The notes: generated by a model from the sequence alone, not told the origin. Positions 10,570 to 49,753 are shown, numbered from the stretch's first letter. The stretch is 64,000 nt of DNA from IMGVR_UViG_3300033977_000108:1-64000; one strand, 5' to 3'. A program made the numbers and translations.

Positions 10570-10582
10570 AGTGTTGCTCCTG

Positions 10583-10849
10583 TTAGCTCTGTCCTTTTGC
10601 CAATGGCCCACCATCCAGGAGTATTCTGCCGTGCTTGTCTTGAAAGGCATTCATCTCCCGTAGCCATTCCCACACGCTCATGTCAGCGGTCTTTACCGCC
10701 ACATTAGGGCCCGCGCGCACGGCAAGCTCGGCACAGCTAATACAGAGGGCCATGGGAAAGCCACTGGCATTATAGCTTATCTCAACCATGTGGTTCTGGT
10801 CGGTGGTGTAAATACCGACTGATGTCGTGCTTTTCTTTACGGCGGCCAT
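10583..10849 (-). CDS. Hypothetical protein
   Basis: ORF track; CISC. Confidence 0.55.
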   Translation of the reverse strand: MAAVKKSTTSVGIYTTDQNHMVEISYNASGFPMALCISCAELAVRAGPNVAVKTADMSVWEWLREMNAFQDKHGRILLDGGPLAKGQS

Positions 10850-11990: not shown

Positions 11991-12202
11991 CGCTTTGCTC
12001 CTTTAGTAGCAATGGCCCCGGGCCGCTTCACCGGAAACTCAGCACATGCCTGTGCAGGATGGATACTAACCAGGTGATTAGCACCATCAAAATCGTGGGC
12101 GTAAACATCAGGATCACATAGACCACTGACTCGCCTGCGTCGCGCTCGTAAGATTTCCCGTTTTGTCCACCCTTTTTGTTTTCCTTCATGGGTAACCCCC
12201 AT
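11987..12202 (-). CDS. Hypothetical basic protein
   Basis: ORF track. Confidence 0.5.
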   Translation of the reverse strand: MGVTHEGKQKGWTKREILRARRRRVSGLCDPDVYAHDFDGANHLVSIHPAQACAEFPVKRPGAIATKGAKR

Positions 12203-24449: not shown

Positions 24450-24822
24450 GCCGTCTCCTCCTTTCTCTGTAATTCATGATGACATCCTTGCTAACTATGC
24501 CAATAACCGCAGCTGCCATCAAGCTCAGCAGCTCTATAGCCCAGTTAGCTAAATGCCCTAGACTGATGGCGATAGCGCAGGTAAGCACCCCCAGCATGTA
24601 CTTGCTGTGCAATTTGAGATGCCCGCTAATCCAGATGACAATCATACTTACCAGCAGAGCCGGAGCATAGGCAGCCATCAACACTATTACCGCCGCCTCT
24701 ATCAGGCTCTTGACCACGTTCCACTTCCAGCTCTGATACTTACCATCCCAGAAGAAGTTCTTCAGAGCCAGAAGTCCAAACAAGCCTGCTATCAGGCTTA
24801 TGTACAAGGCTCGTCTGGTCAT
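24439..24822 (-). CDS. Multi-TM membrane protein
   Basis: Three to four hydrophobic helices; SD AAGGAGG. Confidence 0.75.
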   Translation of the reverse strand: MTRRALYISLIAGLFGLLALKNFFWDGKYQSWKWNVVKSLIEAAVIVLMAAYAPALLVSMIVIWISGHLKLHSKYMLGVLTCAIAISLGHLANWAIELLSLMAAAVIGIVSKDVIMNYRERRRRRGY

Positions 24823-24873
24823 ACACTTACCTCCTTTCAGAGCGGCTTTGTAGTCGCTCGGAAGTGGGCTCCG

Positions 24874-25924: not shown

Positions 25925-26248
25925 TCATTTCGCCTCCCTTCCAAAGAAAGCACACCACAGAGGAACGATAAAGAACACAACGAAGAAGTTCATTATCGTC
26001 CCACCCAGAGCAAAATCAACGCTCAACGGATTAGTAATCCCATGGGTGCCGTAATTGACGCCCTCTGTCACAGCCAACGTCACTATCTTGTGCCTATTGA
26101 CCCATGACAGAATGGCTCTCGTCGGCCGTCTGTCCTTCATGCCGAAGAAAGCTACCATCTCGTTCATCTTCAATACTCCAAGCCAGCCAAACATCCAAAA
26201 GACCAGCCCAGAGATGAAGCTTGAACGCGAACTAGGAGTGAATGTCAC
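25925..26248 (-). CDS. Membrane protein
   Basis: Multiple TM segments; SD GGAGG. Confidence 0.7.
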   Translation of the reverse strand: MTFTPSSRSSFISGLVFWMFGWLGVLKMNEMVAFFGMKDRRPTRAILSWVNRHKIVTLAVTEGVNYGTHGITNPLSVDFALGGTIMNFFVVFFIVPLWCAFFGREAK

Positions 26249-26251
26249 AAA

Positions 26252-27153: not shown

Positions 27154-27570
27154 TCACCTCACAAACCAGTGGAAAGCCCAATGAGCCAGGCCGAGCCATC
27201 CACCAACGATAATCGCCGACGCCAAAGCAAGGAGCAAGCCCCAAACAGCCTTGGCTTTATCGGGTGCTTTCGGAGTGTCCGGCTTCGCCAAGCCGCAGAG
27301 AAAGCGGATGTTAGGAATAAGAGCGGTGACTTCACTACGCTCAACGCCATATTCATAACAATACTGAAACACGGCTTCGGCAACCGTCTTGGCAAGATGG
27401 ACAAACTCCGGAGAGCCATGAGGCACTCCTTTCTCCTCATGACCCTGGGCGCGAAGAGAATAATCAGCAATCTTACTCTCCAAGCGCTTGAAGTCCCACC
27501 ACTTATGGGCACGACGGCAGGAAGCCTTGATGCCAACATAAGCGTCTTTCACTTCATTGTAGGCTTTCAT
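27154..27570 (-). CDS. Hypothetical protein with C-terminal TM
   Basis: SD AGGAGG before MKAYN; C-terminal VWGLLLALASAIIVGGWLGL. Confidence 0.7.
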   Translation of the reverse strand: MKAYNEVKDAYVGIKASCRRAHKWWDFKRLESKIADYSLRAQGHEEKGVPHGSPEFVHLAKTVAEAVFQYCYEYGVERSEVTALIPNIRFLCGLAKPDTPKAPDKAKAVWGLLLALASAIIVGGWLGLAHWAFHWFVR

Positions 27571-27659
27571 AGCCCACCTCCTTTCACGTTGCTTACGGAC
27601 AATTAAGTCCTTGATGCTCATAGACTTACGCTATGAGCATCGGGGAACTAATCCTCCTT

Positions 27660-27773
27660 TCAGTCTTTCTTCTTGGTAGCGACATAGCCGGCGAGAAAGC
27701 TGAAAACAGCCGCCAACACAAACAAGCAAATAGACACAAGAAGCGGCCCATTTATAAACATGTGGTAATGCAC
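27660..27773 (-). CDS. 37-aa single-TM micro-protein
   Basis: SD GAGGAGG plus GTG; MHYHMFINGPLLVSICLFVLAAVFSFLAGYVATKKKD. Confidence 0.55.
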   Translation of the reverse strand: MHYHMFINGPLLVSICLFVLAAVFSFLAGYVATKKKD

Positions 27774-27776
27774 AGC

Positions 27777-27881
27777 TTAACCTCCTCTCTTCCTGATTTC
27801 CCGCCGCACCATGATGCCAAAGGCTGTAAAGAAAAAGACCAGCCCTAGCATGATGGAAACGACAAAGATGGCGTCGTACAT
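27777..27881 (-). CDS. 34-aa single-TM micro-protein
   Basis: SD GGAGG; MYDAIFVVSIMLGLVFFFTAFGIMVRREIRKRGG. Confidence 0.5.
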   Translation of the reverse strand: MYDAIFVVSIMLGLVFFFTAFGIMVRREIRKRGG

Positions 27882-28165
27882 TCCATTCCTCCTTCCCGTC
27901 TGTCCAAGCCGGCCAGCTCCATAGCAGCAATAACACTAAGCATGTCAGAAAAACTGACAAGCTCAGCGAGTGCTCCAATGATAGCTATAAAGGCCTCAGT
28001 CGCCTGTTCAGGCGACTTATCAGCCAAAGCCCGCATGAACAAGATACATGCTATCTCCGTCTTACTAATAACCACAATCTTCTCCTTTCGTCTGCGTTCA
28101 GTCCTGAACGCAGACCAAAAGACACCAAGTGCCGGGTAGAAAGGTGAGGAATCCCTATTCACCAA
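27845..28165 (-). CDS. Hypothetical protein
   Basis: ORF track. Confidence 0.5.
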   Translation of the reverse strand: MVNRDSSPFYPALGVFWSAFRTERRRKEKIVVISKTEIACILFMRALADKSPEQATEAFIAIIGALAELVSFSDMLSVIAAMELAGLDRREGGMECTTPSLSFPSC

Positions 28166-28216
28166 GAGGACAAATGAATAGAGAACAATCTATCCGGCAC
28201 CCAGTGCTAACCACAG

Positions 28217-28489
28217 CTAGGCTTTATCCGGCCCAAACAGACCACAGACAATCTGTGTCCATTCCAAAGGGCCGAAATAAGCATAGAGAATGTAAGCCAT
28301 CAGTGCGCTGGGGCAACTGACCCCAACCGCATCACAAGCACACCGAATGTGGGCATCAACAATCTCTTCTGTCAAATTCAACTCCTTGGCAATCGACAGA
28401 GGAGTCTGGCCTTTCATCATCATAGCCACTACCCTACATTCTGTAGCAGTCAGCGTTTTACCGCCTAACAGCAATTTAGCCTTAGCCAT
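28217..28489 (-). CDS. LuxR/sigma-region-4-type HTH DNA-binding protein
   Basis: LTATECRVVAMMMKGQT..SIAKELNLTEEIVDAHI matches the LuxR C-terminal pattern LTxRExEVL..L..G....EIA..L.LS..TV..H. Confidence 0.8.
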   Translation of the reverse strand: MAKAKLLLGGKTLTATECRVVAMMMKGQTPLSIAKELNLTEEIVDAHIRCACDAVGVSCPSALMAYILYAYFGPLEWTQIVCGLFGPDKA

Positions 28490-31400
28490 TGTTCACCTCC
28501 TTTCCGGCGTCCGGGACGCCTTGATTTAGGACTTTCAAAGGCACATACAGCCGAAGGTCAAGGGCATAAGGACTTGTCCCAGAAGACCCTATATGCCAAG
28601 CCAATGCCCCTCTCACCTCGCCGACCGCCGGGTCGGTAATCCAAGGGAATAGATGAATAAGCGTATCCTTGGTAATCCAGCCTACATGCTGGTCTGTCTC
28701 ACTGAACACCTCAACCGCGGGTTCTCCCTCATACAGAGTCGGCTTCAGTTTGACCACAGAACCCGCCATAGCAATAAACTGCCTACGAGCTTGTTCCAGT
28801 TCAGCACGCTTATCACCAGTCGCTGCCTTGAGCTTTGTCTCCCAGCCATCCACTACACGGACAGTAAGACCGGAAGACGCCCCACAAGGAGGCGTCTCCG
28901 GCTTATCACTGACCAGCAGAAAGCCATGGTCAAGAGTATACTCGCCCTCGGACAGCGGCTCAATCAGCTCACCAATAGCATTGTGAAGATGAGCTGTAGT
29001 TCCCTTGATTCTGAATGTCATACCAGTTGGGTCATAGTCCGTCTTCTCCACTACCACTTGCTCGCGGACTTGCCCATAATCATTCTCAAAGCTGTCCTTG
29101 GTAACAGCTCTGTCATACCACCTAAATGGCGTGCGCTTGGTTGTGAGCCCGCACGCGCGCAGCGCCATGATAAAGCCATCCACAGTATGCTTGCCATACA
29201 GGATGCCGTCCCGGACCTCTCTGAGGTCCATCTCAGCCCCCTCATTGCGTGGTATCTCTTTATCAGAGGTGGGATGAGGAAGATTGTTATAGATATTCCG
29301 AGCCAGAGCCACATAGACTTCGGTCGCCAGCCCGGACGCCATAATGAAGGAATGAACACGCTCCTCTGCAAAGAAATAGGCAGAGATAGCAGCCTCATCC
29401 TCGGTCATTATTACCCTGTCGCGGTGGTCTTTGTGAGCGGCAAGGAACTCATTCTTCTTCGTCTGCAGCAGGCCATTATAATAAACCTGCGCTTGATTCG
29501 CCAGGCGAGCTGCAGAATCACTGACCTGGAAGGACTCCATCTCAGGAGGCACACGCCAGATATGGCTCCAATCCTCTGCTTTGGCTTCTTCCACAGCCTG
29601 CGCATAACGATGGCGCCACGCTTCCAGCTCCGCGCTGATAGGAGTAGGAATAGGAATAGGCTCATCAGGAGTTCCCAGCCTACTGACTGGTATCCTGCCT
29701 CGCCCTTCCCAACCACCCTCCCACATCCAGGCGCCAGCCACAGGACACTCCCTCCTGAAGCTGGAACAAGCTGCCTGCTCCCTATCTATAGGCAGCCCGG
29801 TCTGTTTAGAGCTATCAATAATGCGTTGAGTCTCACCACAGACCATCGGCATCTCGGACTCCCAGAAGTCCTTCTCCATCCAGGCGATAGCCGCCTTGAT
29901 CTTCTCGTTCTGCGGCATAGCCCGGAGAGTATCCATTACCAAGCTATAGTTATTGAAGATGTCGATATACCACAGCTCAGTATTCACCGCACAACCGATG
30001 CCAAGCCTGCTCTCCTTGAGCTTGCCCAGCATATCGCAGATTACATCCTCGTCATAGCTGGGCTTCTCAATAGCCTTAGTAAAACGCCTTGGCACAGGCT
30101 CCACAACCGCTTCCTCCGGCCTGAATTTGACATTGAACGCAGGCAGAGCGCGCAGGAACGCATTGATAGCCGGGTCGAAGATGAAGATATCAGAATCATC
30201 ACAATCGCCCACATCCTGTCCCTTTACCGGCTTGGGATAATCAGGATGGATAAAGATACAAGTAGCCTCTTTGTCCAGAGCCCGCAGAGCAGGATGGCTA
30301 ATAGCATCCAGGAACCTGGCATCGTTCCTGGAACCATTTGGATTCCTGATGAGGGTGCCTTGACCAACAAAGCCACCGAAATAACACTGGCCTGGTTTCA
30401 GCACACCACCTTCCGGCTTGGGCCGGCCCCAGCCATCAAATGCCGTCGGGTCGGCAGTCAGATGACCCCTAAGAGCACAGGCTCTGAAATCGCCATGCGG
30501 GTCATCCAGCCTCGCCGGCACACGGAATCCAATCCTTGCCCGCCCGGGGTCATGGTCAAATCCCTTCATACGCAGAGCGGACAGCCGCCTGGCCCTACGA
30601 AAGCCAGGCATCCTATTCAGCCCCTTGACCCCGGACTCAAGGAGCTTCCAAACCTTCCAGTCCTCAATAGTGGCACGTATTGGCCGTATCTCAGTCTCGC
30701 CTCGCTCATCCACTATCTCCTCAAAGTCCATCGGCTTATAAAAGCCGATGGACTGCTTGAGGCCGGTAAGGTCTTCCTCTTCAAGCTCTTTGAAGATTCT
30801 GCCCATATACTCATCTGTAAGAATCTCAAAGAACTTACCGTCCAGCGCGTGAGCGAGCTCGAAATTGATGGCAGTTTGAATGTCAGTCCGTGCCGGACTG
30901 CCATGCTTCTCAGAGAGCACACCCAGGAAGACATTGCCATCCCAAGCTCTGACAGAAGACTTGGGCTCATAGACAATCAAGTCCACGTTCTTCATGTCAC
31001 GAACCACGAGGACATTTGCCTTCATCATTCCCGGGCTCATCAGGCCAGTGATGGCGAATAAATCCCCTGGACTGGCAGACTTACGATGCAGCATGCGCTT
31101 GGCAAAGCGCGCGCTGCAATAGGCCTGACCAGCTACCCTCCAATCCGGCCACCGGCCGGAAGGAGGAGCAAATAGAATATCCAAAGTCCCGCCCTCTTCG
31201 AGTTTGACTTTGATTACCTCATCAAACTCATTCAGGCGATACCGGCCCACTTCCTTGCCAAACAGGGCATAAGGATGAGGAGCCAGCAGCCTCTGCAGCC
31301 GCTTCGGGATATCCGGCTTGAACTCAGGAATATCCAAGCCAAACAGACGCCAGGCCTCCGCGCTAGGCAGATGCCTGTCAATCATCACACCGCTAAGTCC

Positions 31401-31754
31401 ATTAGGATCACGGACATAACTAACGACCCTGAACCAGCGGCTATTGTCCGCAGGAACAAACACACCTTGGGCTGACTTCAGAAAAGCCCTCGCCATTGCG
31501 AAGTTCTCTTCTGTAATGCGCTCAGCCTCAGAAGTATTGCCTATTCCTTTGGCAACAGAAAGGCGGGAATAAGGAATCCCCGCATGTTCCAGGAACGGGC
31601 TCCAGGCAGCTGGACCGATACACTTCTTCGGATCCAGTTTCTGGCCTGGAACCTGGGGCAGCAAATAGCTACACTTACCATCACTGCCCATAGAGACCGT
31701 CCACCTAAGATTAGGTGGCCTTATCACTTGTTGAATATTTGTAGGCGTTTTCAT
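28482..31754 (-). CDS. Putative single-subunit two-barrel RNA polymerase (YonO/QDE-1-like) with C-terminal HIRAN-like segment
   Basis: AGQAYCSARFAKRM (cf. DG.G.IS..LA), GMMKANVLVV (cf. G.KG.L.V), IRNP...D.R...A..HP.L..L....IF...GDCDDSDIFIFDP (cf. R.P...GGD.DGD...WD); C-terminal VKLKPTLYEGEPAVEVF...HVGWITK. Confidence 0.7.
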   Translation of the reverse strand: MKTPTNIQQVIRPPNLRWTVSMGSDGKCSYLLPQVPGQKLDPKKCIGPAAWSPFLEHAGIPYSRLSVAKGIGNTSEAERITEENFAMARAFLKSAQGVFVPADNSRWFRVVSYVRDPNGLSGVMIDRHLPSAEAWRLFGLDIPEFKPDIPKRLQRLLAPHPYALFGKEVGRYRLNEFDEVIKVKLEEGGTLDILFAPPSGRWPDWRVAGQAYCSARFAKRMLHRKSASPGDLFAITGLMSPGMMKANVLVVRDMKNVDLIVYEPKSSVRAWDGNVFLGVLSEKHGSPARTDIQTAINFELAHALDGKFFEILTDEYMGRIFKELEEEDLTGLKQSIGFYKPMDFEEIVDERGETEIRPIRATIEDWKVWKLLESGVKGLNRMPGFRRARRLSALRMKGFDHDPGRARIGFRVPARLDDPHGDFRACALRGHLTADPTAFDGWGRPKPEGGVLKPGQCYFGGFVGQGTLIRNPNGSRNDARFLDAISHPALRALDKEATCIFIHPDYPKPVKGQDVGDCDDSDIFIFDPAINAFLRALPAFNVKFRPEEAVVEPVPRRFTKAIEKPSYDEDVICDMLGKLKESRLGIGCAVNTELWYIDIFNNYSLVMDTLRAMPQNEKIKAAIAWMEKDFWESEMPMVCGETQRIIDSSKQTGLPIDREQAACSSFRRECPVAGAWMWEGGWEGRGRIPVSRLGTPDEPIPIPTPISAELEAWRHRYAQAVEEAKAEDWSHIWRVPPEMESFQVSDSAARLANQAQVYYNGLLQTKKNEFLAAHKDHRDRVIMTEDEAAISAYFFAEERVHSFIMASGLATEVYVALARNIYNNLPHPTSDKEIPRNEGAEMDLREVRDGILYGKHTVDGFIMALRACGLTTKRTPFRWYDRAVTKDSFENDYGQVREQVVVEKTDYDPTGMTFRIKGTTAHLHNAIGELIEPLSEGEYTLDHGFLLVSDKPETPPCGASSGLTVRVVDGWETKLKAATGDKRAELEQARRQFIAMAGSVVKLKPTLYEGEPAVEVFSETDQHVGWITKDTLIHLFPWITDPAVGEVRGALAWHIGSSGTSPYALDLRLYVPLKVLNQGVPDAGKEVNNG

Positions 31755-31873
31755 ACGCCTACCTCCTCTCTACTTACACAGCAGGCAATGCCTTAGCCTC
31801 TCACAGCTTGGCATTGCATGTGGACAGTTAAGTCCTGACTGCCCAAGGACTTATGCCCTTGGGCAGCAGGGAA

Positions 31874-32113
31874 TCAACCCTCCAATGCTGCTGAGTCCCC
31901 AGGTATAAGTCGATGGTAGAACCCACGACCATAACATGAACCAAAGCTGGTCAGAAGCTCCAACTTAACTACTACATACCCTGGGTTCTCAGCAGCATAA
32001 TTATGCAGCACCTGCCGAGCACAGGCCTCATCAAGTTCAAGAACAACATACGTTTCCTCAGCAGTCTCACCTTCCCAGCTGAAAACCACACGAAATACGA
32101 AATAGGTAAGCAC
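31874..32113 (-). CDS. Early hypothetical protein
   Basis: SD GAGGAGG. Confidence 0.65.
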   Translation of the reverse strand: MLTYFVFRVVFSWEGETAEETYVVLELDEACARQVLHNYAAENPGYVVVKLELLTSFGSCYGRGFYHRLIPGDSAALEG

Positions 32114-32201
32114 AGCTCACCTCCTCATAACATGTTGAATTTAACAACAGTGCCTAATTTGGCACATCCCAAGCCTTCTGTCACTAGGCTTGGGTCTACC
32201 A

Positions 32202-32405
32202 TCAGGCTCTATCAATAGGACTCTCACAGCTTGTCAATAAACTTATTGACAAGCCAGCCAAGAACACCCGCCAAACCAATGACTGCCAATTTGCCATACC
32301 AAGGCAGCCATAGGCAGGCACACCAAAAGACGAACAAAACAACGACACAAATAACAACAGAGAGAAAAGATACAATACGGTCCATGTTAAGTTCTCCTTT
32401 TTCAT
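32202..32405 (-). CDS. Early membrane protein
   Basis: TM WTVLYLFSLLLFVSLFCSSFGV. Confidence 0.5.
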   Translation of the reverse strand: MKKENLTWTVLYLFSLLLFVSLFCSSFGVPAYGCLGMANWQSLVWRVFLAGLSISLLTSCESPIDRA

Positions 32406-32463
32406 TGATTTACAGCCCGGCCTGCCGGCTGGCAGTCCGACAGGCAAGGCCGGCTATCAATCA

Positions 32464-32646
32464 TCAAGGCTGAATAGCCATGACTTCCTCTATGGAGAGC
32501 CCCTCCATACGGAGAGCGACTATACAGTCTACCTCTCCGATGTAAGCCACTTCATAGTCCTTGCAATTGGGATCCGCTAAATCCCGACGGTATGCCAACA
32601 GCATCTCCTTCAGTTCGTTCACACGCATCTCTTTCGGCTTGTCCAT
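32464..32646 (-). CDS. Early hypothetical protein
   Basis: SD GGAGG. Confidence 0.65.
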   Translation of the reverse strand: MDKPKEMRVNELKEMLLAYRRDLADPNCKDYEVAYIGEVDCIVALRMEGLSIEEVMAIQP

Positions 32647-32655
32647 ACATCCTCC

Positions 32656-32877
32656 CTAAGCCTCTGAAACAAAGGCTCTTGGCTGGCTGAATGGCCCCCA
32701 CTCAGGGAACCTACGCAGCTCAAATGGTTTGATCCGCAAGGCATTGCAGAAAGCCGCTTTCTCTGCTTGCGCAGCCCGCTCAATGCCCAGATTCTCACAG
32801 AAGCAATAAAGCTCAAACTCCTTCTTAACCGCTGAACCAACAACGGACTCATAAAACAACATCTTCAGTTGAGCCAT
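32656..32877 (-). CDS. Early hypothetical protein
   Basis: SD GGAGG. Confidence 0.65.
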   Translation of the reverse strand: MAQLKMLFYESVVGSAVKKEFELYCFCENLGIERAAQAEKAAFCNALRIKPFELRRFPEWGPFSQPRAFVSEA

Positions 32878-32961
32878 ACATCACCTCCACTAAGTTGTTC
32901 TAATCAAAGTAGATAGGCCAATGCCTACCACACTGCCCTGCTGTCACCAGGGCAGTCGCTG

Positions 32962-33216
32962 CTAGACATCAGGCAAGCCGGCCTCACAGCGCTTCTGCAA
33001 CCAGGCATCAATCACCTGCTGCTCAGTAGCAGGCCCGCCTCCAGGCCGGAGAGAGGGAAGAACCGCTTGCGACTTGCTCGCAAACAGACGAGCTAAACCG
33101 CGCTCTGAAAGCAGCTCAGAAATTCTCTTGAGATTGATATAGCGTTTCACTATAACAATCCCAAGAATAGTGACAACAACTACAGCCACTCCACCAATGA
33201 CCATGATTTTAGTCAT
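32962..33216 (-). CDS. First leftward gene, N-terminal TM protein
   Basis: SD AGGAG; IMVIGGVAVVVVTILGIVIV. Confidence 0.65.
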   Translation of the reverse strand: MTKIMVIGGVAVVVVTILGIVIVKRYINLKRISELLSERGLARLFASKSQAVLPSLRPGGGPATEQQVIDAWLQKRCEAGLPDV

Positions 33217-33424
33217 CTTGATTCTCCTATTCCCACGAAGTATTCTCACTTACGACCGTGCACGGAATACCCCGTGGGCTCGAAACGATAGATGGGAAGG
33301 GTCCCATACCCTCATGTCCCCTAGTCACCAGCTGGCTTCTCCTTCCCCGCCTCGCGTCCGAAGCCGGGTATCCATTTTCTAAGCTTGCCAGCCCTCGCGC
33401 GGAGCCTGCCTGCTGAAGCACATA

Positions 33425-33433
33425 TGCTATAAT
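33425..33433 (+). promoter_or_regulatory. Extended -10 promoter, leaderless start at 33440
   Basis: TGCTATAAT with ATG 6 nt downstream and no SD. Confidence 0.65.
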
Positions 33434-33439
33434 ATAGCC

Positions 33440-33640
33440 ATGGATAAACTTCTTCTTCGTTCCACTATTGAGGCACGGCGCAGAGAGATAATGGCCCTGA
33501 TCAATGCCCAAATCCGCAATCCTACTTGGCCTTATTTGGCTGGGACGGAAAACTGGCTGCCCAAACCCGATATCTCTTTGGAAGATGTTGAGGCTATTAG
33601 GGTTGAAATGCTCACACCGGGCTGCGATAGAGACTTGTAG
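33440..33640 (+). CDS. Hypothetical protein
   Basis: First rightward ORF, behind the extended -10. Confidence 0.6.
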   Translation: MDKLLLRSTIEARRREIMALINAQIRNPTWPYLAGTENWLPKPDISLEDVEAIRVEMLTPGCDRDL

Positions 33641-33654
33641 CTATACTAACCAGG
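33641..33654 (+). promoter_or_regulatory. CTATACTAACCAGG motif copy 1 (putative late promoter)
   Basis: Exact copies at 40279 and 49456. Confidence 0.6.
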
Positions 33655-33657
33655 AGT

Positions 33658-33957
33658 GTGAAATGCCAAGCCTATCGCATAGCCAGCGCTAAAGAGCTGT
33701 ATTGTGATCCCTCCTCCCTGAATTGCTTCGACGATATCCGTATGTGTTATTGGAAGGAAGATGACGGGTGGTGGCTTTATATCCCTTATTGTGGCGCCGG
33801 GCGTCTGCATCTACACCAAGTAACCGAGCATGAAGACGGCACTATCACCGTCACCCCTTCTATCCGCATGACAGGCCATCACAACGGTCGGCCTGCCGCC
33901 CATCATGGCTATCTAATCAAAGGAATATGGGAGGGTTGTAATGATGATGGGGTGTAA
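33658..33957 (+). CDS. DUF6527-like metal-binding protein
   Basis: C...H...EDGTITVTPSI...HHGYLIKGIW. Confidence 0.6.
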   Translation: MKCQAYRIASAKELYCDPSSLNCFDDIRMCYWKEDDGWWLYIPYCGAGRLHLHQVTEHEDGTITVTPSIRMTGHHNGRPAAHHGYLIKGIWEGCNDDGV

Positions 33958-34170
33958 AATGGTGGCTCTCTTTGTAGCAGGCACTTTCATCTTCTTTATT
34001 CTCCTGGATGTTATCATCCAGAAGCTCAAGCATAAACTCTAAGTCGTTCTAATATCAGGACATTTTTTGTTTCGGGGGCCAAATTAGGCCATACTAACCA
34101 CGAGTAGAGATATCTAAAAGCAGAGTTGGATGCCCTAAAGAATAAATCTAACCCCGGCGCCGGATAAAAG

Positions 34171-34179
34171 TGATATAAT
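34171..34179 (+). promoter_or_regulatory. Extended -10 promoter
   Basis: TGATATAAT upstream of the phosphatase gene. Confidence 0.55.
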
Positions 34180-34211
34180 ATCCCTTGGTGCGATTATGGC
34201 TGTGACAAGGT

Positions 34212-34685
34212 GTGACTATGGCTGTGACAACGCTTTGGTACCCAGACGGCAACCAGCACTACATAGGGCGGATTATGGACCGCCTATTTGTATCTAACAT
34301 CCATACTGCTAGGGCTTTAGCCCAGATAAACCCTTTTGGTATCCGCTTCGTGGTCAATGCTACTATGTGGCCGGTAGACTTGCCGCCTGATATCCAGGTC
34401 ATAAAACTGGACCTAAAGGACGATGCGGCCATCCCAAAGGAAGTATTATATGCTACACTAGGCTGGATGCACGAAATGATAAAGTATGACCCTGTTCTTG
34501 TTAATTGCTGGGCCGGCCGGTCGCGCTCGGCAGCCATCGTTGCGGCTTATCTTTGCCGCTGCGGTATGGACTGGGAGGAAGCCGAGAGGTTCATAAAGGA
34601 CAAATGGGTAAAGACCAATATACATCCATTGGTGGCCGCCAGCGTAAGAGAAGCTGTGAATGAAATGGCAACAGCCGCGATATAA
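34212..34685 (+). CDS. Dual-specificity (CX5R) phosphatase
   Basis: GIRFVVN, LKDD, VLVNCWAGRSRSAAIVAAYL. Confidence 0.88.
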   Translation: MTMAVTTLWYPDGNQHYIGRIMDRLFVSNIHTARALAQINPFGIRFVVNATMWPVDLPPDIQVIKLDLKDDAAIPKEVLYATLGWMHEMIKYDPVLVNCWAGRSRSAAIVAAYLCRCGMDWEEAERFIKDKWVKTNIHPLVAASVREAVNEMATAAI

Positions 34686-34693
34686 GAGGAGTT

Positions 34694-35227
34694 ATGGAAA
34701 CAAAACTCAAGCAGAAACTGCCGCAACTTCCGAAGCGCGAGCCCACAGCGATTATAAAGCAATGGGTCTGGGAACTGGCTATTCGCGCGCAGAGCACCCT
34801 AATGACAGCCACCCGGGATTATGATGGCGCCACAAGGGATTGGCCTGGACGGCCTATTATAAGGGCTATCAGGGCAATAACCTTGATTAGCGCCGATCCA
34901 CGAGAGAATGACCCGAAACACCCGGCCTATGATCCGAATGCATTTTGTTCAGCACGGCTGGATGAATTAGACCACGCTTTCAAGGAGTTCCTACGGGGCG
35001 TGGAGCCGTTGACACTACATTTTTATGACCATCTAAAAGATGCTTGTGAGATAATTGGCTATAAGTACAAGAAAGACCCGAAAGTGGCGGATGCTTTTCG
35101 CCGGGGCTATGAGGCTATGTGCCATAAAATAGCCATGAATCCGGAAACCGAGGAGCAAATGGACGAGCGCCAAAACGAAGACAGAACGAAACGGCCCAAA
35201 CAGACTAATGTTGATCCGAAGATATAG
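34694..35227 (+). CDS. Conserved phage hypothetical protein
   Basis: W...L..R.QS.L..A.R..D...LHFYDHL..A.EIIGY pattern; SD GAGGAG. Confidence 0.75.
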   Translation: METKLKQKLPQLPKREPTAIIKQWVWELAIRAQSTLMTATRDYDGATRDWPGRPIIRAIRAITLISADPRENDPKHPAYDPNAFCSARLDELDHAFKEFLRGVEPLTLHFYDHLKDACEIIGYKYKKDPKVADAFRRGYEAMCHKIAMNPETEEQMDERQNEDRTKRPKQTNVDPKI

Positions 35228-35423
35228 CCAGCTGTATAGGCTATCTCTATGTTAAATGATGCTATAGATCCGAGCCAGTCTTGCGTAGGGAGCCACCTCC
35301 AGTCTGTGGGAGCAGCCAAAGCCCACAGCGTAGTACAGAGTCTCCAGCACCTCGACACGGCCGTTAAATTAGAATGGTTTATAAACTTGAATAGTTTAGT
35401 AAATTTGATCTGCGAGACAGGCT

Positions 35424-36083
35424 ATGATTCTAGTAAATTCAGAGTTCAATTCAAAAGGCTTCGGTATTAGCCTCCCTTTCAGGCCCCCGCGCCAACGCTC
35501 TTCCTTTGATCCCAACTATCCGTATGGACAGCCGCAGGAGATTGATTATAGTCTCTTGGACCAGGCTGGCGTGGAGTTGGTACAAGAGATGAATCGTCAT
35601 CCTTGGCTTGCTACGGTGGATTATTGTTCCGGGCACCCAAGCGACCGCCCGCCATCAGAAAATACACCAATCTCTATAGCCAGAGACGAGCTCGCTGCTC
35701 GCTTTATGCCTAATGCATTTAGATGGAATTATTGGGAAGAGATAAAGGGATGTATGGATGCCTATGTGGCTGGCAATAAGAGTAAAACAGATTATCTTAT
35801 AGCCAGAAATGGTCTAACCGAGCTTTCAAAGACTACACTGCGTATTGCTATGTTTGTAGGCTCTTTGAAGCCTTTTATATACTGGATGCGGCTGGTTTTT
35901 ATGGGCATTTCCGCGGCTTTTCTTGGCCTACCAGAATACGAGATGCCAAAACTCACGCTAAATCCAATGAAGTGTGCGAAGCATGAATTGAATTTCATCT
36001 TTGAGTTTGAATACTTTGGGGTGGCGCACCGCCAGGTTGTTCATGATATTATGCTGGACGCCTTGCGTGAAATCCCCCTATAA
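35424..36083 (+). CDS. Hypothetical protein with TYW3-like N-terminal signature
   Basis: LDQAGVELVQEMNRHPWLATVDYCSGH resembles D..I..LV..LN......T..SCSG(R/H). Confidence 0.5.
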   Translation: MILVNSEFNSKGFGISLPFRPPRQRSSFDPNYPYGQPQEIDYSLLDQAGVELVQEMNRHPWLATVDYCSGHPSDRPPSENTPISIARDELAARFMPNAFRWNYWEEIKGCMDAYVAGNKSKTDYLIARNGLTELSKTTLRIAMFVGSLKPFIYWMRLVFMGISAAFLGLPEYEMPKLTLNPMKCAKHELNFIFEFEYFGVAHRQVVHDIMLDALREIPL

Positions 36084-37095: not shown

Positions 37096-37901
37096 TGTTA
37101 GAGGATAAGCCAATACGAAGCTCTCCCGCCGAGACAGGTATTCAGCCGGCGCCAGAAGCCCCACCTTTAGACGCTTTGTTCAAAGCGCCGGCACCTGCCC
37201 CAGACCCAGAGCCAAAACCACCCTCTGATGACCTGACAGCTATTGTACCTATTGGTGTGCCCAAGGACTTATTGAAGCTATTGCCTATGGCAGAATTGAA
37301 TCTGTCTCCTGAACAGGCGGCTATTGTCGCGCGTTACCATGAAGCCAATGTGGTTCTTGGGGCCGCAGGCCAGATACTTATTTGTTCCGAAGCCTGCCCG
37401 TTCAAAAAGCGCTGTCCGCTCTATAAAATAGGCAAGGCTCCCTTCTGTTATCCATGTCCCTTTGAAGCGAACTATGCCGTAGAACGCTTCGCCGCTTGGT
37501 TGAAAGTCATTGTTCCGCCAGGTCAGCACATGACCGAGACCGAGCGTTCAACAATCGCAACATTGACTTATTTAGACATAGACGAATTGCGTTGTCGCAA
37601 CATCTTAGCCGACGCCGAGAATGCCAAGCTAACATCCTTAGTTGTCAGGGACTTAGACATAGAAACCAAGACGCCCCTGGCCTATGAAGAAGTAATAGCC
37701 GCCAACTCAGAAAGACTAAGCAAAATCCTCTATGAGAGGATGACCATCCTCAACGCTTTCGAGCTAACCCCAAGAGAAAAGACCCGCAAGAACAAATTCG
37801 CAAAGAAGACCGGCAGCGACCTGGCATCTAGACAATCCGCGGCAGCCGATAGAATAAGACAGACATCTATCGACGCCGAGATTGTCGAAGAGTCAGAATA
37901 A
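37092..37901 (+). CDS. Cys-cluster helical protein (candidate terminase small subunit)
   Basis: CSEACPFKKRCP..CYPCPFE; basic C-terminal helix; TerS assignment rests on position only. Confidence 0.45.
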   Translation: MMLEDKPIRSSPAETGIQPAPEAPPLDALFKAPAPAPDPEPKPPSDDLTAIVPIGVPKDLLKLLPMAELNLSPEQAAIVARYHEANVVLGAAGQILICSEACPFKKRCPLYKIGKAPFCYPCPFEANYAVERFAAWLKVIVPPGQHMTETERSTIATLTYLDIDELRCRNILADAENAKLTSLVVRDLDIETKTPLAYEEVIAANSERLSKILYERMTILNAFELTPREKTRKNKFAKKTGSDLASRQSAAADRIRQTSIDAEIVEESE

Positions 37902-40278: not shown

Positions 40279-40292
40279 CTATACTAACCAGG
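40279..40292 (+). promoter_or_regulatory. CTATACTAACCAGG motif copy 2 (putative late promoter)
   Basis: Intergenic, 15 nt upstream of the 40308 ATG. Confidence 0.65.
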
Positions 40293-47539: not shown

Positions 47540-49753
47540 ATGCCACGCACCAAGAAAATGACTGAAAAAGAGGAACAGAAAGCGCAGCGTTTAGACCGCC
47601 TAGCTCGCTTCAAGCGCGGTAAATTTGTCTCTCCTATGGCTGTAGCAGCCGTGCCGAAATCAAAAGGCCTGTTGCCAGAGCCGAGAATGGATAACTGGGG
47701 AGTGCGGGCTATTCAGAAGCCCCTTACTTGGTCGCCCCTTACCGAACGGATAAGACTAGCCACGCGTATAAAAGATAAAGCGGCTACCCAAGAACAGAGA
47801 GACAAGACTGGTGGTTTTTACTTGAAAGATGTAGGCTCTTCTGACCTGCCAAAAGTATTTGCCAAGGTCGCCGCCAAAATACAGAACGAACAGGATTACA
47901 TGAACTCGTACTGGGGCTGGATTGGCATTATACAGCCGGAGTATGAGCTCCTAGAACCATGGACCATCTTTGATACCGAAGCTTATCTGCGTGTTGCCAC
48001 GGAGCGGAAACAAAGCCTGATGTTTAGGAACGGCTTCAAAGTCATGGGCGATAATGAGACCTTCCGCCAATACATAGAGAAGCGATTTGCCCAGATTGCC
48101 TATTTCATGGATCTCACGACCGAGAACTTCTTCAAGAGGATACTGATCCAACTTTTGGTCTCTTCAAACTGTATAGTATTGAAAATACGTGATGAGAATG
48201 CTTCCGGCGGCACGGCTAACGACAAGAATAAGAATAAGAAACCTGTGGCTGCCTATACCATTGTCCCATCCCATACTATTTATCCCTACTTGGATGGCAA
48301 GGGCCGAATAGAGAAGTGGCGCAGGTTTTTCGCCGACGGCCGCACATTTGAAGATTATCCGGTAGAAGATATCATTCATTTTTACTGGGACAAAAAGGAA
48401 GGCCACATCTTTGGCACTCCTCGGACAGTTGCTATCCGCGATGACATTTTGGCTTTGCGCCGGCTGGAAGAGAATGTGGAACTGTTGATGATACATCACC
48501 TGTTCCCATTATTTCATGTGGCAGTGGGCACCCCAGACCAGCCCGCGGATTACGAAGTGGAAGGCGTCAGCGAGGTAGATTTCGTCCGTAATGCCATTGA
48601 ACAGATGCCCAAAGAAGGTATGCTGGTCACCGATGAGCGCGTGCGGGTGGAAGCCGTAGGTGCCAAAACCACTGCCCTGGAATATGACAAGATTGTCCAG
48701 CACTATAAGACCCGTGTTTTCACAGGGTTAGGGGTAAGCGGCGTGGATATGGGAGAGGGGGATACCTCTAATAGAAGTACCGCTGAAACAGTATCCCAGA
48801 ACTTGAAGGATAGCGTAAAAGCTGACCTGGACTGGTTCTGTGGGCAGATTCAGATGTTGATGATAAAGGAATTCTTCCAAGAGGCGCCATTTGACCTTAG
48901 CGTTCAGAATGCCGTTGCTGATGTCCATCTGGCGTTCTCTGAGATAGATGTGGATGGGATGATAAAGACCGAGAACCATCATCTCAATCTGTATAACAGC
49001 CATTTGATTGATGAGACCGAAGCCCGTCAAAGGCTCGGCCGCCAGCCATTGACTGAAGAGCAGCGCAAGAATACGCATTATCATCGCCATATCCTGGATT
49101 TGGCTCTCAGGACGGCCAAGGCGCGCGCCCAATATGCCTATGAATACGCTATTCCAAGAGGCGAAGGCACGCCTGGCGGCAAGAGTACAGGAGGTGGCGG
49201 CAAAGGCTCGCCAGCAAAGAAAGCCACGCCCCGGTACAAAAGTCCAAAAGTGGCCGAGCAGCCTGAAAATCAGCATGGAAGGAACCTAGACCCTCATCGT
49301 GCTAGGTCCAGTACAAGTCTAGAATCCCTCCGCGATCTTCTTTTGGCCCTGCGCGCTGCTTTGGATAAGGAAGGCCGGCTGACCTTGGATGAATGGAGAA
49401 ACAATGCCGAGAAGGCTATCTATCTCTATTTCAGTGATTTGATGGGTGAGAACGCCTATACTAACCAGGAGCGAATGGAACAAGTCCGAGATAGGGCTCT
49501 GGCACTTATCCGTGAAACACATAATCCAGACCTGATTTCGGTGATTTTAGATGATGCGGAAGTAGATCTTCTGCAAGAGGAAACTGAGACACATGGCGAA
49601 CAAGAAACAGATGCCCGACCCGCTATTGAACCTGCACAAGGCGCCATTACCGCAGGTGATTCAGAACCTGGGCAAAGCCTCGGGGATGAATCCACAACAA
49701 CGGAAGGAACGAGTTCTGGAGTTGGCACTGGGGCCGAAACGAACGACTCCTAA
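47540..49753 (+). CDS. Portal protein
   Basis: Y...DIIHF....G..FG.P.., HYK..VF.GLGVS..D.G.G..SNRSTA; position between terL and protease. Confidence 0.85.
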   Translation: MPRTKKMTEKEEQKAQRLDRLARFKRGKFVSPMAVAAVPKSKGLLPEPRMDNWGVRAIQKPLTWSPLTERIRLATRIKDKAATQEQRDKTGGFYLKDVGSSDLPKVFAKVAAKIQNEQDYMNSYWGWIGIIQPEYELLEPWTIFDTEAYLRVATERKQSLMFRNGFKVMGDNETFRQYIEKRFAQIAYFMDLTTENFFKRILIQLLVSSNCIVLKIRDENASGGTANDKNKNKKPVAAYTIVPSHTIYPYLDGKGRIEKWRRFFADGRTFEDYPVEDIIHFYWDKKEGHIFGTPRTVAIRDDILALRRLEENVELLMIHHLFPLFHVAVGTPDQPADYEVEGVSEVDFVRNAIEQMPKEGMLVTDERVRVEAVGAKTTALEYDKIVQHYKTRVFTGLGVSGVDMGEGDTSNRSTAETVSQNLKDSVKADLDWFCGQIQMLMIKEFFQEAPFDLSVQNAVADVHLAFSEIDVDGMIKTENHHLNLYNSHLIDETEARQRLGRQPLTEEQRKNTHYHRHILDLALRTAKARAQYAYEYAIPRGEGTPGGKSTGGGGKGSPAKKATPRYKSPKVAEQPENQHGRNLDPHRARSSTSLESLRDLLLALRAALDKEGRLTLDEWRNNAEKAIYLYFSDLMGENAYTNQERMEQVRDRALALIRETHNPDLISVILDDAEVDLLQEETETHGEQETDARPAIEPAQGAITAGDSEPGQSLGDESTTTEGTSSGVGTGAETNDS
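49456..49469 (+). promoter_or_regulatory. CTATACTAACCAGG motif copy 3 (internal to portal, upstream of the head genes)
   Basis: Exact 14-mer, 300 nt before the protease gene. Confidence 0.5.

What the first reader, a model, noticed from the sequence alone, without database searches (positions are those of the whole stretch)
28482..31754. Single-subunit two-barrel RNA polymerase candidate with non-canonical DxDD(S) catalytic loop and HIRAN-like tail
Seen: the order AGQAYCSARFAKRM, then GMMKANVLVV, then IRNP..D.RFLDAISHPALRAL..IFIHP..GDCDDSDIFIFDP (motif at nt 30189-30209) parallels QDE-1/YonO double-psi-barrel polymerases (DG.G.IS, KG.L, R.P, GGD.DGD..WD). The usual DxDGD reads DCDDS here. The C-terminus resembles HIRAN. 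The gene lies near the start of the early arm, as T7 gene 1 does, and is coupled to a LuxR-type HTH. Inference: a divergent phage RNAP, possibly with the HTH as specificity factor. RNA-templated activity on the nearby structured RNAs cannot be excluded.
Basis: partly seen in the sequence, partly recalled or inferred. Interest (0 to 1): 0.85.

Follow-up and report, generated by a model that had tools for sequence, protein, structure and literature searches.

The report
Phage RdRP-like two-barrel RNA polymerase
This 1090-residue gene of an uncultivated ~205 kb phage encodes a single-chain RNA polymerase related to the enzymes that drive RNA interference in eukaryotes; the kind is already known from a few phages, but this branch has an unusual shortened catalytic loop kept in every relative found.

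Summary
No single-sequence search found anything. A full scan of 1.84 billion protein representatives found a rare family (61 hits). In it D517, D519 and D520 are present in 32/32 sequences, with near-invariant R470-x-P472, K245 and K265. The family profile hits only eukaryotic cellular RdRPs in the PDB, five relatives hit Pfam RdRP, and hhalign links the family to Bacillus phage 0305phi8-36 gp99 (96.6 %), annotated since 2007 as a putative RNAP. An alignment-based AlphaFold model (pLDDT 84) matches RDR2 and QDE-1 (Foldseek E 1e-13 to 1e-8, over 900 columns), then the Thermus-phage non-virion RNAPs.

So the core reading holds: a two-barrel, single-chain phage polymerase with an invariant DxDD loop, one residue shorter than the universal DxDxD. 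The gene's position, a few small ORFs into the arm diverging from the structural genes, is conserved in relatives and in 0305phi8-36. The HIRAN tail is not supported. The LuxR HTH overlaps the stop codon but is not conserved elsewhere. DNA-templated transcription is inferred, not shown. A 14-nt motif (CTATACTAACCAGG) heading late genes is a candidate promoter.

The parts
28482..31754 (-). Gene for the 1090-aa RdRP/QDE-1-like single-chain two-barrel polymerase
   Evidence: ORF. Family of 61 representatives. AF2 model pLDDT 84.1, pTM 0.80. Foldseek matches to RDR2 and QDE-1, E 1.5e-13 to 8e-8.
31143..31754 (-). N-terminal beta-rich region (residues 1-204) with helix 149-157 carrying near-invariant K151 and R155, just before the first barrel
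   Evidence: DSSP of the model. Conservation. Equivalence to the QDE-1 slab domain and DPBB1 auxiliary helix is inferred only.
30900..31142 (-). First barrel (beta-subunit-like DPBB, residues ~205-285): G209, T236, K245 (query MKAN, family KGH) and K265
   Evidence: Strands 210-213, 232-238, 243-250, 259-261 and 274-282. Conservation. Assignment rests on fold match and motif order; hhalign of this half to gp99 is not significant.
30480..30899 (-). Connector of ~140 residues between the two barrels (residues 286-425), starting with the TDxQSxINF element (Q293)
   Evidence: Model helices 292-335 and 367-398. A ~140-residue connector is described for QDE-1 and crAss gp66.
30165..30479 (-). Second barrel (beta-prime-like DPBB, residues 426-530) with the R-x-P motif and the catalytic loop
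   Evidence: Six strands: 427-434, 456-458, 464-470, 479-484, 499-502 and 521-525. HMM alignment to RDR2 and QDE-1 across this region. hhalign to gp99.
30339..30347 (-). R470-N-P472, equivalent of the invariant Rpb1 R446/P448 pair
   Evidence: R in 30/32 and P in 33/33. Aligned to the RNPclHPGD region of RDR2 and the RSP of QDE-1.
30195..30209 (-). Catalytic loop G516-D517-C-D519-D520 (family consensus GGGDxDD), one residue shorter than DxDGD
   Evidence: D517, D519 and D520 in 32/32. Aligned with a one-residue gap to GGDLDGD of RDR2, GGDYDGD of QDE-1 and GGADTDGD of gp99. Translation check.
29145..30164 (-). Helical region (residues 531-870) holding IGxxVN (G587, N591), LExIID (I646, D647), R687 and PDGxLWG (D849); likely the bridge-helix, trigger-loop and clamp parts
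   Evidence: Invariant and near-invariant columns. Helices in the model. Covered by the hhalign match to gp99. The functional labels are inferred.
28521..29144 (-).
   Evidence: Model strands. Conserved in five of six compared relatives and absent from P0037. The last module aligns to gp99 962-998. No HIRAN or any other match.
28217..28489 (-). 90-aa stand-alone LuxR/GerE-type HTH protein whose start overlaps the polymerase stop by 8 nt
   Evidence: Pfam GerE E 3.3e-7. Overlap and Shine-Dalgarno sequence. No homologue beside other family members.
31874..33249 (-). Five small ORFs (53-95 aa, two with hydrophobic stretches) between the strand-switch region and the polymerase gene, separated by hairpins
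   Evidence: No Pfam matches. The same layout, a run of small ORFs and then the polymerase, is seen in L003, L004, and the P0006 and P0037 contigs.
33641..33654 (+). Candidate phage promoter or leader motif CTATACTAACCAGG, pointing away from the polymerase arm and abutting the SD of ORF 33658-33957
   Evidence: Variants sit at the same junction in L003/L005 and L004.
34089..34102 (+). Variant copy CCATACTAACCACG ahead of the rightward structural arm
40279..40292 (+). Exact copy of the motif in the 46-nt gap before ORF 40308-40964
49456..49469 (+). Exact copy inside the 3' part of the portal gene, ~300 nt before the next gene; the same place in a related phage whose portal is 44 % identical

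Best explanation
The gene encodes a non-virion, single-chain, two-barrel RNA polymerase. It belongs to the clade that holds the eukaryotic RNAi polymerases (QDE-1, RDR2) and their phage relatives. Its nearest annotated relative is gp99 of Bacillus jumbo phage 0305phi8-36. Shown here: homology, fold, and strict conservation of the active-site residues. Inferred from here on: the gene is expressed early, from the leftward arm that starts at about 33.3 kb, together with the translationally coupled LuxR-type HTH protein. The enzyme then makes RNA on phage DNA by the usual two-metal mechanism. D517 and D519, plus D520 in a loop one residue shorter than usual, would hold the metal in the second barrel. 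R470 and P472 would shape that site. K245 and K265 of the first barrel would bind the RNA 3' end and the incoming NTP. Its most likely task is transcription of middle and late genes, as shown for the distant relatives YonO and P23-45 gp64. The conserved word CTATACTAACCAGG in front of rightward (structural) genes is the best promoter candidate.
For: Family and conservation: 61 relatives among 1.84 billion representatives. D517, D519 and D520 are invariant, and R470, P472, K245, K265, N591, D647 and D849 are nearly so. Homology: the family profile hits only RDR2 (E 7.9e-4) and QDE-1 (5e-3 to 1e-2) in the PDB, aligned on RxP...GGDxD(G)D. Pfam RdRP is hit by 5 of 29 members, best 1.5e-10; P0037 scores 33.2 bits against a cut-off of 23.8. 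hhalign to gp99 gives 96.6 %, E 7e-10, 504 columns, and gp99 is itself a full-length Pfam RdRP member at 67.6 bits. Fold: AF2 pLDDT 84.1 and pTM 0.80. The Foldseek top 20 are all RDR2 or QDE-1 (E 1.5e-13 to 8e-8, 784-992 aligned columns, over 900 in all but one), followed by the Thermus-phage nvRNAPs 8f5m and 8f72. BFVD returns phage proteins named RdRP and the crAss-type RNAPs. Context: the terminase's nearest cultured relatives include 0305phi8-36, where gp99 sits second in the arm diverging from the structural genes. L003, L004 and L005 share the junction genes, and L003 and L005 also the downstream genes. No other ORF of at least 150 aa in the window carries a DxDGD or DFDxD signature, and no RNAP appeared among 20 other ORFs scanned. 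Motif: three exact 14-mers in the window and three more in the rest of the contig. All 8 window matches are on the + strand. The motif is shared with the related RNAP-bearing contig, including the orthologous site in the portal gene. Precedent: YonO is a DNA-dependent RNAP for SPbeta late genes (PMC5467207). gp64 is an nvRNAP with its own promoters (PMC10770324). QDE-1 also uses DNA templates (PMC9508822).
Against: No member of this family, nor gp99, has been assayed. The catalytic loop is not the universal DxDxD. The position that by motif order corresponds to the fourth invariant Asp (QDE-1 D709) is Ala208 in the query and Asp in only 20 of 35 relatives; D709A weakens QDE-1 strongly. The first-barrel assignments rest on fold match and motif order only (hhalign probability 0.8 %). 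140 kb of the contig was not examined, so another RNAP or a sigma factor cannot be excluded. The motif contains TATACT, a good sigma-70 -10 hexamer, so host RNAP could read it. Only about 7-9 copies were seen in 205 kb.
Confidence: 0.62

Rival explanations
1. The enzyme is active, but its job is not promoter-driven transcription. It copies RNA or single-stranded DNA, as QDE-1 and the RDRs do, to make antisense or double-stranded RNA. That RNA might be used for host shut-off, for counter-defence, or for regulating the phage's own hairpin-rich early transcripts.
For: The closest solved structures are RNA-templated enzymes. QDE-1 has dual template use with the same active site. The early arm has many stable hairpins without U tracts between genes; terminator-like sites number 16 against 6.8 expected. 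The window also carries an RNA-repair set, RNA ligase plus PNKP. The altered loop and the missing fourth Asp could go with altered substrate handling.
Against: Every phage two-barrel single-chain enzyme tested so far is DNA-dependent (YonO, gp64, crAss gp66). The authors of the gp99 analysis noted that an RdRP role in a DNA phage would be unprecedented (PMC2147016). The gene's position and a phage-specific upstream motif fit a transcriptase. No match to PADLOC defence models.
Confidence: 0.15
2. It makes RNA primers or R-loops for replication of the large genome, rather than messenger RNA.
For: The gene lies in the arm that holds nucleic-acid enzymes (DNA ligase 22800-24449). QDE-1-type enzymes start de novo on single-stranded DNA. 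No primase was seen in the window.
Against: Only 64 of 205 kb was seen. The distant relative 0305phi8-36 has two primases as well as gp99. A ~120 kDa enzyme with clamp-like helical domains is more than priming needs. The gene sits with host-takeover-like small ORFs, not with replication genes.
Confidence: 0.07
3. It is a catalytically dead or repurposed two-barrel protein, for example a nucleic-acid-binding scaffold. On this view the non-canonical loop and the missing fourth Asp mark loss of polymerase activity.
For: DxDD departs from a signature otherwise reported as invariant in the superfamily (PMC2919709). The query has Ala208 at the presumed D709 position.
Against: Dead enzymes lose their active-site residues. 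Here three Asp, the R-x-P pair, two Lys, N591 and D647 are kept across sequences that are only ~20 % identical, which implies selection on catalysis. crAss gp66 (DFDID) shows the loop tolerates change at the fourth position.
Confidence: 0.06
4. The resemblance is a chance motif match in an unrelated large phage protein.
For: No Pfam, PHROGs, NCBIfam or PDB hit with the single sequence.
Against: Profile, profile-profile and fold searches all converge on the same superfamily, with E values of 1e-3 to 1e-13 and collinear motifs.
Confidence: 0.01

Closest known systems
Bacillus phage 0305phi8-36 gp99 (ABS83659.1), 'hypothetical DNA-directed RNA polymerase, similar to Pfam05183'
   Same: Single chain of ~1100-1200 aa. 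hhalign 96.6 %, E 7e-10 over 504 columns that include R-x-P, the catalytic loop, IGxxxN and part of the C-terminal module. Same genome layout: near the start of the arm diverging from the structural genes of a ~200 kb myovirus-type genome with a related terminase. Not flagged as a virion protein in that record. Activity untested in both.
   Different: gp99 has the canonical GGADTDGD and is a full-length Pfam RdRP hit (67.6 bits). The query family has GGGDxDD and mostly escapes Pfam. Pairwise BLAST is only 2e-4, and hmmsearch with the family profile does not find gp99. Firmicute host versus an unknown host, possibly Gram-negative. No HTH neighbour in 0305phi8-36.
Eukaryotic cellular RdRPs: Neurospora QDE-1, plant RDR2 (Pfam PF05183)
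   Same: Best structural matches (Foldseek E 1.5e-13 to 8e-8, over 900 columns in all but one). They are the only PDB sequence matches of the family profile, aligned at RxP...GGDxD(G)D...D. Two barrels in one chain joined by a ~140-residue connector.
   Different: 12-14 % identity. The loop is one residue shorter. The presumed D709 equivalent is not conserved. There are extra C-terminal beta modules. It is encoded by a phage. Template preference is unknown. The query itself is below Pfam's threshold.
YonO of Bacillus prophage SPbeta
   Same: A phage-encoded single-chain two-barrel enzyme of similar size. YonO is the only close functional precedent for 'late-gene RNAP of this superfamily'.
   Different: Only marginal profile similarity (hhalign probability 24.5 %, 56 columns around R-x-P). 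The link runs through gp99 (tblastn of gp99 against SPbeta-like phages, 1e-4).
Thermus phage non-virion RNAPs (P23-45 gp64, P74-26 gp62; PDB 8f72, 8f5m)
   Same: Next-best solved structures (E 2.6e-6 to 1.7e-5). A non-virion single-chain RNAP encoded among the earliest genes that recognises its own promoter motif.
   Different: About half the size (~590 aa). No detectable sequence similarity. Canonical DxDxD.
crAss-like phage virion RNAP (phi14:2 gp66)
   Same: The same clade of single-chain two-barrel enzymes, and also non-canonical at the fourth loop position (DFDID). Weak Foldseek matches.
   Different: gp66 is a domain of a 2180-aa virion-packaged protein. Here the protein is free-standing and lies in a non-structural arm.

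Membership tests
Two-barrel (double-psi beta-barrel) RNA polymerase superfamily | Two DPBB domains forming one active-site cleft, here within one chain | tested here: met
   AF2 model (pLDDT 84) shows two beta-barrel-sized strand clusters, at 205-285 and 426-530. Foldseek gives full-length matches (over 900 columns in all but one) only to two-barrel enzymes: RDR2, QDE-1 and the Thermus-phage nvRNAPs.
Two-barrel (double-psi beta-barrel) RNA polymerase superfamily | Three invariant acidic residues in the loop between the last strands of the beta-prime-like barrel | tested here: met
   D517, D519 and D520 in 32/32 sequences. The loop lies between strands 499-502 and 521-525.
Two-barrel (double-psi beta-barrel) RNA polymerase superfamily | Canonical D-x-D-x-D spacing of that triad | tested here: not met
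   The family has D-x-D-D. HMM and hhalign alignments need a one-residue gap against DLDGD, DYDGD and DTDGD. I treat this as a derived variant within the superfamily, since homology is established independently.
Two-barrel (double-psi beta-barrel) RNA polymerase superfamily | Invariant Arg and Pro (Rpb1 R446 and P448) ahead of the triad | tested here: met
   R470 in 30/32 and P472 in 33/33, aligned to the RNP of RDR2 and the RSP of QDE-1. The list of invariant residues comes from PMC2919709.
Two-barrel (double-psi beta-barrel) RNA polymerase superfamily | Two basic residues in the beta-like barrel (Rpb2 K979 and K987; Q736/R738 and K743 in QDE-1) | tested here: inconclusive
   K245 (36/37) and K265 (34/36) are near-invariant and lie in first-barrel strands. 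Residue-level equivalence rests on motif order only (hhalign probability 0.8 %).
Two-barrel (double-psi beta-barrel) RNA polymerase superfamily | Fourth invariant Asp in the beta-like barrel (Rpb2 D837, QDE-1 D709) | tested here: inconclusive
   The column before invariant G209 (family DGM, gp99 LDGQG) is Asp in 20 of 35 relatives and Ala in the query. If the equivalence holds, the feature is not met in the query.
Pfam RdRP PF05183 (cellular RNA-dependent RNA polymerases) | Score above Pfam's gathering threshold | tested here: not met
   The query has no hit at E<=1. 5 of 29 relatives hit, best 1.5e-10. P0037 passes at 33.2 bits against 23.8, and P0044 falls just below at 23.3 bits. So the family borders PF05183 rather than sitting inside it.
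Pfam RdRP PF05183 (cellular RNA-dependent RNA polymerases) | RNA-templated RNA synthesis | not testable with these tools
   Needs biochemistry.
0305phi8-36 gp99-like phage polymerases | Profile-level homology over the catalytic half and the same genome position | tested here: met
   hhalign 96.6 %, 504 columns. Position in the arm diverging from the structural genes.
YonO-like RNAPs (SPbeta) | Detectable homology to YonO | tested here: inconclusive
   hhalign probability 24.5 %, E 8e-4, 56 columns.
YonO-like RNAPs (SPbeta) | DNA-dependent, rifampicin-resistant transcription of late genes | not testable with these tools
   Needs an assay or a cultivable relative.
HIRAN domain (C-terminal tail) | Match to the HIRAN profile or to a HIRAN structure | tested here: not met
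   No Pfam family for the full protein at E<=1, for 29 relatives, or for six isolated C-termini at E<=10. The C-terminal profile against PDB sequences returns only a chance globin hit. No HIRAN entry in the Foldseek top 50; weak OB-fold-like hits only.
LuxR/GerE-type HTH (neighbour gene 28217-28489) | Pfam GerE above threshold | tested here: met
   30.3 bits against 23.5, E 3.3e-7.

The most novel reading that the evidence does not exclude
The DxDD clade is a mechanistically distinct branch of two-barrel polymerases. The shortened catalytic loop, together with loss of the fourth barrel Asp, rearranges metal binding. The enzyme then serves something other than ordinary promoter-driven transcription, for example RNA- or ssDNA-templated synthesis of antisense or double-stranded RNA during infection. 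That would make it a prokaryotic-virus counterpart of the RNAi polymerases in function as well as in fold.
Probability: 0.12. Interest if true: 0.85.

Novelty: new variant of a known kind. Interest (0 to 1): 0.55.

Why it matters
Single-chain two-barrel polymerases of phages are the proposed source of the eukaryotic RNAi polymerases, and they are models for the ancestor of all cellular RNA polymerases. Only three or four of them have been studied. This family adds a rare branch found only in uncultivated phages. No current library (Pfam, PHROGs, NCBIfam) names it, so such genes are left as 'hypothetical' in jumbo-phage genomes. Its invariant DxDD loop breaks the one signature reported as invariant in the whole superfamily, so it is a natural experiment on how much the metal-binding loop can change. 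With the candidate promoter word, it also offers a compact polymerase-promoter pair that could be tested in vitro. If the enzyme proved to be RNA-templated, that would be the first such role in a DNA phage.

Tried and rejected
Searches that found nothing:
- Single-sequence searches of the polymerase: Pfam, PHROGs, PDB sequences, NCBIfam and PADLOC, plus tblastn against 50,697 phage records. Relatives P0037 and P0007 also found no cultured phage.
- megablast of 24 kb of the window against the phage records.
- Rfam and tRNA scans of the window.

Tools or searches that failed:
- The single-sequence AlphaFold model was useless (pLDDT 33.6).
- The search for related loci with the broad alignment A1 failed for lack of a conserved 7-10-column stretch.
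- The metagenome scan with the single protein found no relative.
- The tighter subfamily profile A3 lost the PDB hits that the broader A1 profile gives.

Tests that came out negative or insignificant:
- hhalign of the N-terminal halves (family against gp99) is not significant.
- The HIRAN tests were negative.
- Sigma-70-like promoter sites in 27.5-35 kb are at chance level (7 found, 7.0 expected), so no early promoter could be named.
- My first motif guesses were mixed. With mismatches allowed, TGGTTAGTATRG and ATTAGAACRACTTAG are not enriched. Only the exact copies of the former stand out; it is the reverse complement of the CTATACTAACCA core. The motif is absent from the parts of 0305phi8-36 that I fetched.

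Rejected readings:
- A defence-system component.
- A chance motif match.
- A second canonical two-barrel signature elsewhere in the window.

Full report
**1. What is there.**
The window is the first 64 kb of IMG/VR contig IMGVR_UViG_3300033977_000108 (204,633 bp), and window coordinates equal contig coordinates. It is a tailed-phage genome:
- A rightward arm starts at about 33.4-34.2 kb. It carries the large terminase (43451-45403), the portal (47540-49753) and the major head protein (53565-54911).
- A leftward arm carries nucleic-acid enzymes: DNA ligase (22800-24449), PNKP (5746-6780), RNA ligase (3904-5085), a metallophosphoesterase and a peptide deformylase.
- GC skew flips at the junction.

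The finding's ORF is exactly as described: 28482..31754, minus strand, 1090 aa. All quoted peptides are present, and nt 30189-30209 encode GDCDDSD. Five small ORFs separate the gene from the strand-switch region. A 90-aa LuxR/GerE HTH gene (Pfam GerE 30.3 bits) starts 8 nt before the polymerase stop codon and has its own Shine-Dalgarno sequence.

**2. Is it more than chance?**
The single sequence matches nothing in Pfam, PHROGs, the PDB, NCBIfam, PADLOC or 50,697 phage records. An exhaustive phmmer search of 1.84 billion cluster representatives found 61 proteins (32 at E<=1e-10). About 30 of them are full length, at 860-1060 aa. In alignments of 29 and 61 sequences that are only ~20-25 % identical to the query:
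- D517, D519 and D520 are present in every sequence that covers the loop (32/32).
- R470, P472, K151, R155, G209, T236, K245, K265, Q293, G587, N591, I646, D647 and D849 are invariant or nearly so.

The family consensus around the loop is hRQPNxHxxE ... GGGDxDD......DP.

**3. What it is.**
- The family profile, searched against all PDB sequences, hits only eukaryotic cellular RdRPs: Arabidopsis RDR2 (E 7.9e-4) and QDE-1 (5e-3 to 1e-2). The alignment falls exactly on R-x-P ... GGD-x-D-(G)-D ... D and needs a one-residue gap at the Gly.
- Five of 29 members hit Pfam RdRP (PF05183) on their own, best 1.5e-10. P0037 passes the curated threshold at 33.2 bits against 23.8.
- With the 61-sequence alignment, AlphaFold2 gives a confident model (pLDDT 84.1, pTM 0.80). 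The single-sequence model had been useless.
- Foldseek against the PDB returns RDR2 and QDE-1 as the top 20 hits (E 1.5e-13 to 8e-8, probability 1.00, 784-992 aligned columns, over 900 in all but one). The Thermus-phage non-virion RNAPs 8f5m and 8f72 follow (E 2.6e-6 to 1.7e-5). Multisubunit RNAPs appear only above E 0.1.
- Against predicted viral structures, the best hits are uncultured-phage proteins. One is already named 'RNA dependent RNA polymerase'. A7KVB1 and crAss-type RNAPs also appear.

The model's strand clusters at 205-285 and 426-530 fit the two barrels, and the ~140 residues between them fit the connector described for QDE-1 and crAss gp66.

**4. The link to known phage genes.**
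- The terminase's nearest cultured relatives are ~180-235 kb phages: Moorella MTATph1, Acinetobacter ME3 and Bacillus 0305phi8-36.
- In 0305phi8-36, ORF099 (gp99, 1218 aa) is annotated 'hypothetical DNA-directed RNA polymerase; similar to ... Pfam05183'. It is the second gene of the arm that diverges from the structural genes.
- gp99 is a full-length Pfam RdRP member (67.6 bits).
- hhalign of the family profile against gp99 gives 96.6 % probability, E 7e-10, over 504 columns. The match runs from the second barrel into the C-terminal module. gp99 has GGADTDGD where the family has GGGDxDD. Pairwise BLAST gives 2e-4.
- gp99 was discussed in 2007 as a probable DNA-directed RNAP (PMC2147016). It is counted among 'YonO-like' enzymes in later reviews (PMC2919709; PMC7824862).
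- The family's link to YonO proper is marginal (hhalign 24.5 %, 56 columns). gp99 bridges the two.

Three related uncultivated phages (L003 in a 215 kb contig, L004, L005) keep the layout. The polymerase gene lies a few small ORFs after a divergent junction. Homologues of window genes 34206-34682 and/or 35409-36080 lie across that junction. In L003 and L005, homologues of 25928-26251 and 24442-24873 also lie downstream. The P0006 and P0037 contigs show the same pattern of a run of tiny ORFs followed by the polymerase.

**5. What differs from the known kind.**
- The review of two-barrel enzymes lists eight invariant residues: DxDxD, a fourth Asp in the other barrel, R and P, and two Lys. Here R-x-P is kept, and three Asp are kept in a loop one residue shorter.
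- Two Lys (K245, K265) are kept in the first barrel. Their exact equivalence is by motif order and fold only, since hhalign of the N-terminal halves is insignificant.
- The presumed fourth Asp is Ala208 in the query and Asp in only 20 of 35 relatives.
- I found no paper in the library mentioning a DxDD loop in this superfamily. Absence from that library is not proof.
- Strict conservation of the triad across such divergent sequences argues for a working active site. I could not check the geometry because model coordinates are not exposed.

**6. The tail and the HTH.**
- Residues ~871-1078 form two beta-rich modules. They are conserved in most relatives, absent from P0037, and partly alignable to gp99.
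- Nothing supports HIRAN. There is no Pfam hit for the whole protein, for 29 relatives, or for six isolated tails at E<=10. The PDB-profile search gave no hit. No HIRAN entry is in the Foldseek top 50, which shows only weak OB-fold-like matches.
- The HTH is real and translationally coupled. No homologue sits beside the polymerase gene in L002-L008 or in 0305phi8-36. A role as a dedicated specificity subunit is therefore unsupported, though not excluded for this phage.

**7. How it most likely works.**
Shown: homology, fold, conserved catalytic residues and conserved genome position.

Inferred, step by step:
- The gene is expressed early, from the leftward arm.
- The enzyme polymerises NTPs by the two-metal mechanism of its relatives.
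- It uses phage DNA as template, by analogy with YonO, gp64, crAss gp66 and the DNA-templated activity of QDE-1.
- Its task is middle and late gene transcription.

A possible promoter emerged. The 14-mer CTATACTAACCAGG occurs exactly at 33641, 40279 and 49456, and variants occur at 34089 and 12061. All eight matches with up to 3 mismatches are on the + strand. Three more exact copies lie elsewhere in the contig, with a one-mismatch copy 138 nt from one of them.

The motif usually abuts the Shine-Dalgarno sequence of a downstream gene. It is also exact in the related contig that carries L004, including the orthologous spot inside a portal gene that is only 44 % identical in protein. Two-mismatch variants sit in the divergent junctions of L003/L005 and L004 and point away from the polymerase gene, as in the window.

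It contains TATACT, so host RNAP cannot be excluded as its reader.

**8. Rivals.**
- An RNA- or ssDNA-templated, non-transcriptional role: about 0.15.
- A priming role in replication: about 0.07.
- A dead scaffold: about 0.06. The conservation pattern argues against it.
- Chance: about 0.01. Refuted.

**9. Verdict.**
The enzyme belongs to a kind already known and annotated in phages since 2003-2007. It is best filed as a new, rare, uncultivated-phage variant of the RdRP/gp99-like single-chain two-barrel polymerases, marked by an invariant DxDD loop. Function as a phage transcriptase is the best-supported inference (about 0.6) but is untested.

**Limits.**
- 140 kb of the contig was not examined.
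- No coordinates were available for geometric checks.

Noticed in passing
window 33641-33654, 34089-34102, 40279-40292, 49456-49469 (+); contig positions 69572, 73026, 127600; L017 7690(-), L037 2568(-), L066 7203(-): The conserved word CTATACTAACCAGG(AG) lies directly upstream of the Shine-Dalgarno sequences of rightward genes. It has six exact copies in this contig, is shared with a related RNAP-bearing phage contig, and occupies the same spot inside both portal genes. It is a candidate phage-specific promoter or leader element. It contains a -10-like TATACT.
   Followed up: partly
window 32890-32904 (-) and 34039-34053 (-): A second repeated 15-mer, ATTAGAACRACTTAG, occurs twice on the leftward strand. 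One copy abuts the Shine-Dalgarno sequence of ORF 32656-32877. With only two copies and no enrichment when mismatches are allowed, its meaning is open.
   Followed up: partly
window 27500-35000, e.g. 31821-31884, 32168-32194, 32932-32956, 28083-28122: Stable hairpins follow the stop codons of the small early ORFs, mostly without U tracts, and two have a GTGACAG loop. Terminator-like sites number 16 against 6.8 expected. No Rfam family matches. They could be processing or termination sites.
   Followed up: partly
window ~59800-63900: Long runs of 9-nt coding repeats (GGnTAYACn, i.e. Gly-Tyr-Thr-type triplets) span several ORFs on the + strand, probably collagen-like or fibre proteins. My ORF calls there are unreliable.
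   Followed up: no
window 3904-5085 (-), 5746-6780 (-), 9868-10650 (-), 12186-12833 (-), 22800-24449 (-): An RNA-repair-type set (RNA ligase with PHA02142 OB domain, polynucleotide kinase/phosphatase) sits in the leftward arm with a metallophosphoesterase, a peptide deformylase and an ATP-dependent DNA ligase.
   Followed up: no
window 28653-31061 (+): An 802-aa ORF lies antisense to the polymerase gene. A matching antisense ORF is seen opposite the P0002 gene. It is most likely a shadow ORF produced by codon composition, not a gene.
   Followed up: no
L002 1-2106 and 5290-8274: P0002 is the closest relative (about 30 % identity: 32 % by phmmer, 29 % in the alignment). Its 8.7 kb contig also holds fragments of an RND efflux pump and an outer-membrane factor. 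This suggests a prophage or integrated element in a Gram-negative host, or a chimeric assembly. No tRNA is present. A partial relative lies on a 6 kb contig binned to a Solibacteraceae MAG.
   Followed up: partly
L008 3041-3601: In the P0037 contig the polymerase gene is immediately preceded by an RNase H-like gene, which may be relevant to handling of RNA-DNA hybrids.
   Followed up: no
window 37901-40261, 45860-47530, 49769-52063, 52075-53280 (+): Four large ORFs in the structural arm (401-786 aa) have no match, or only unknown-function matches, in Pfam and PHROGs. All but the first (37901-40261) have homologues in the related contig.
   Followed up: no
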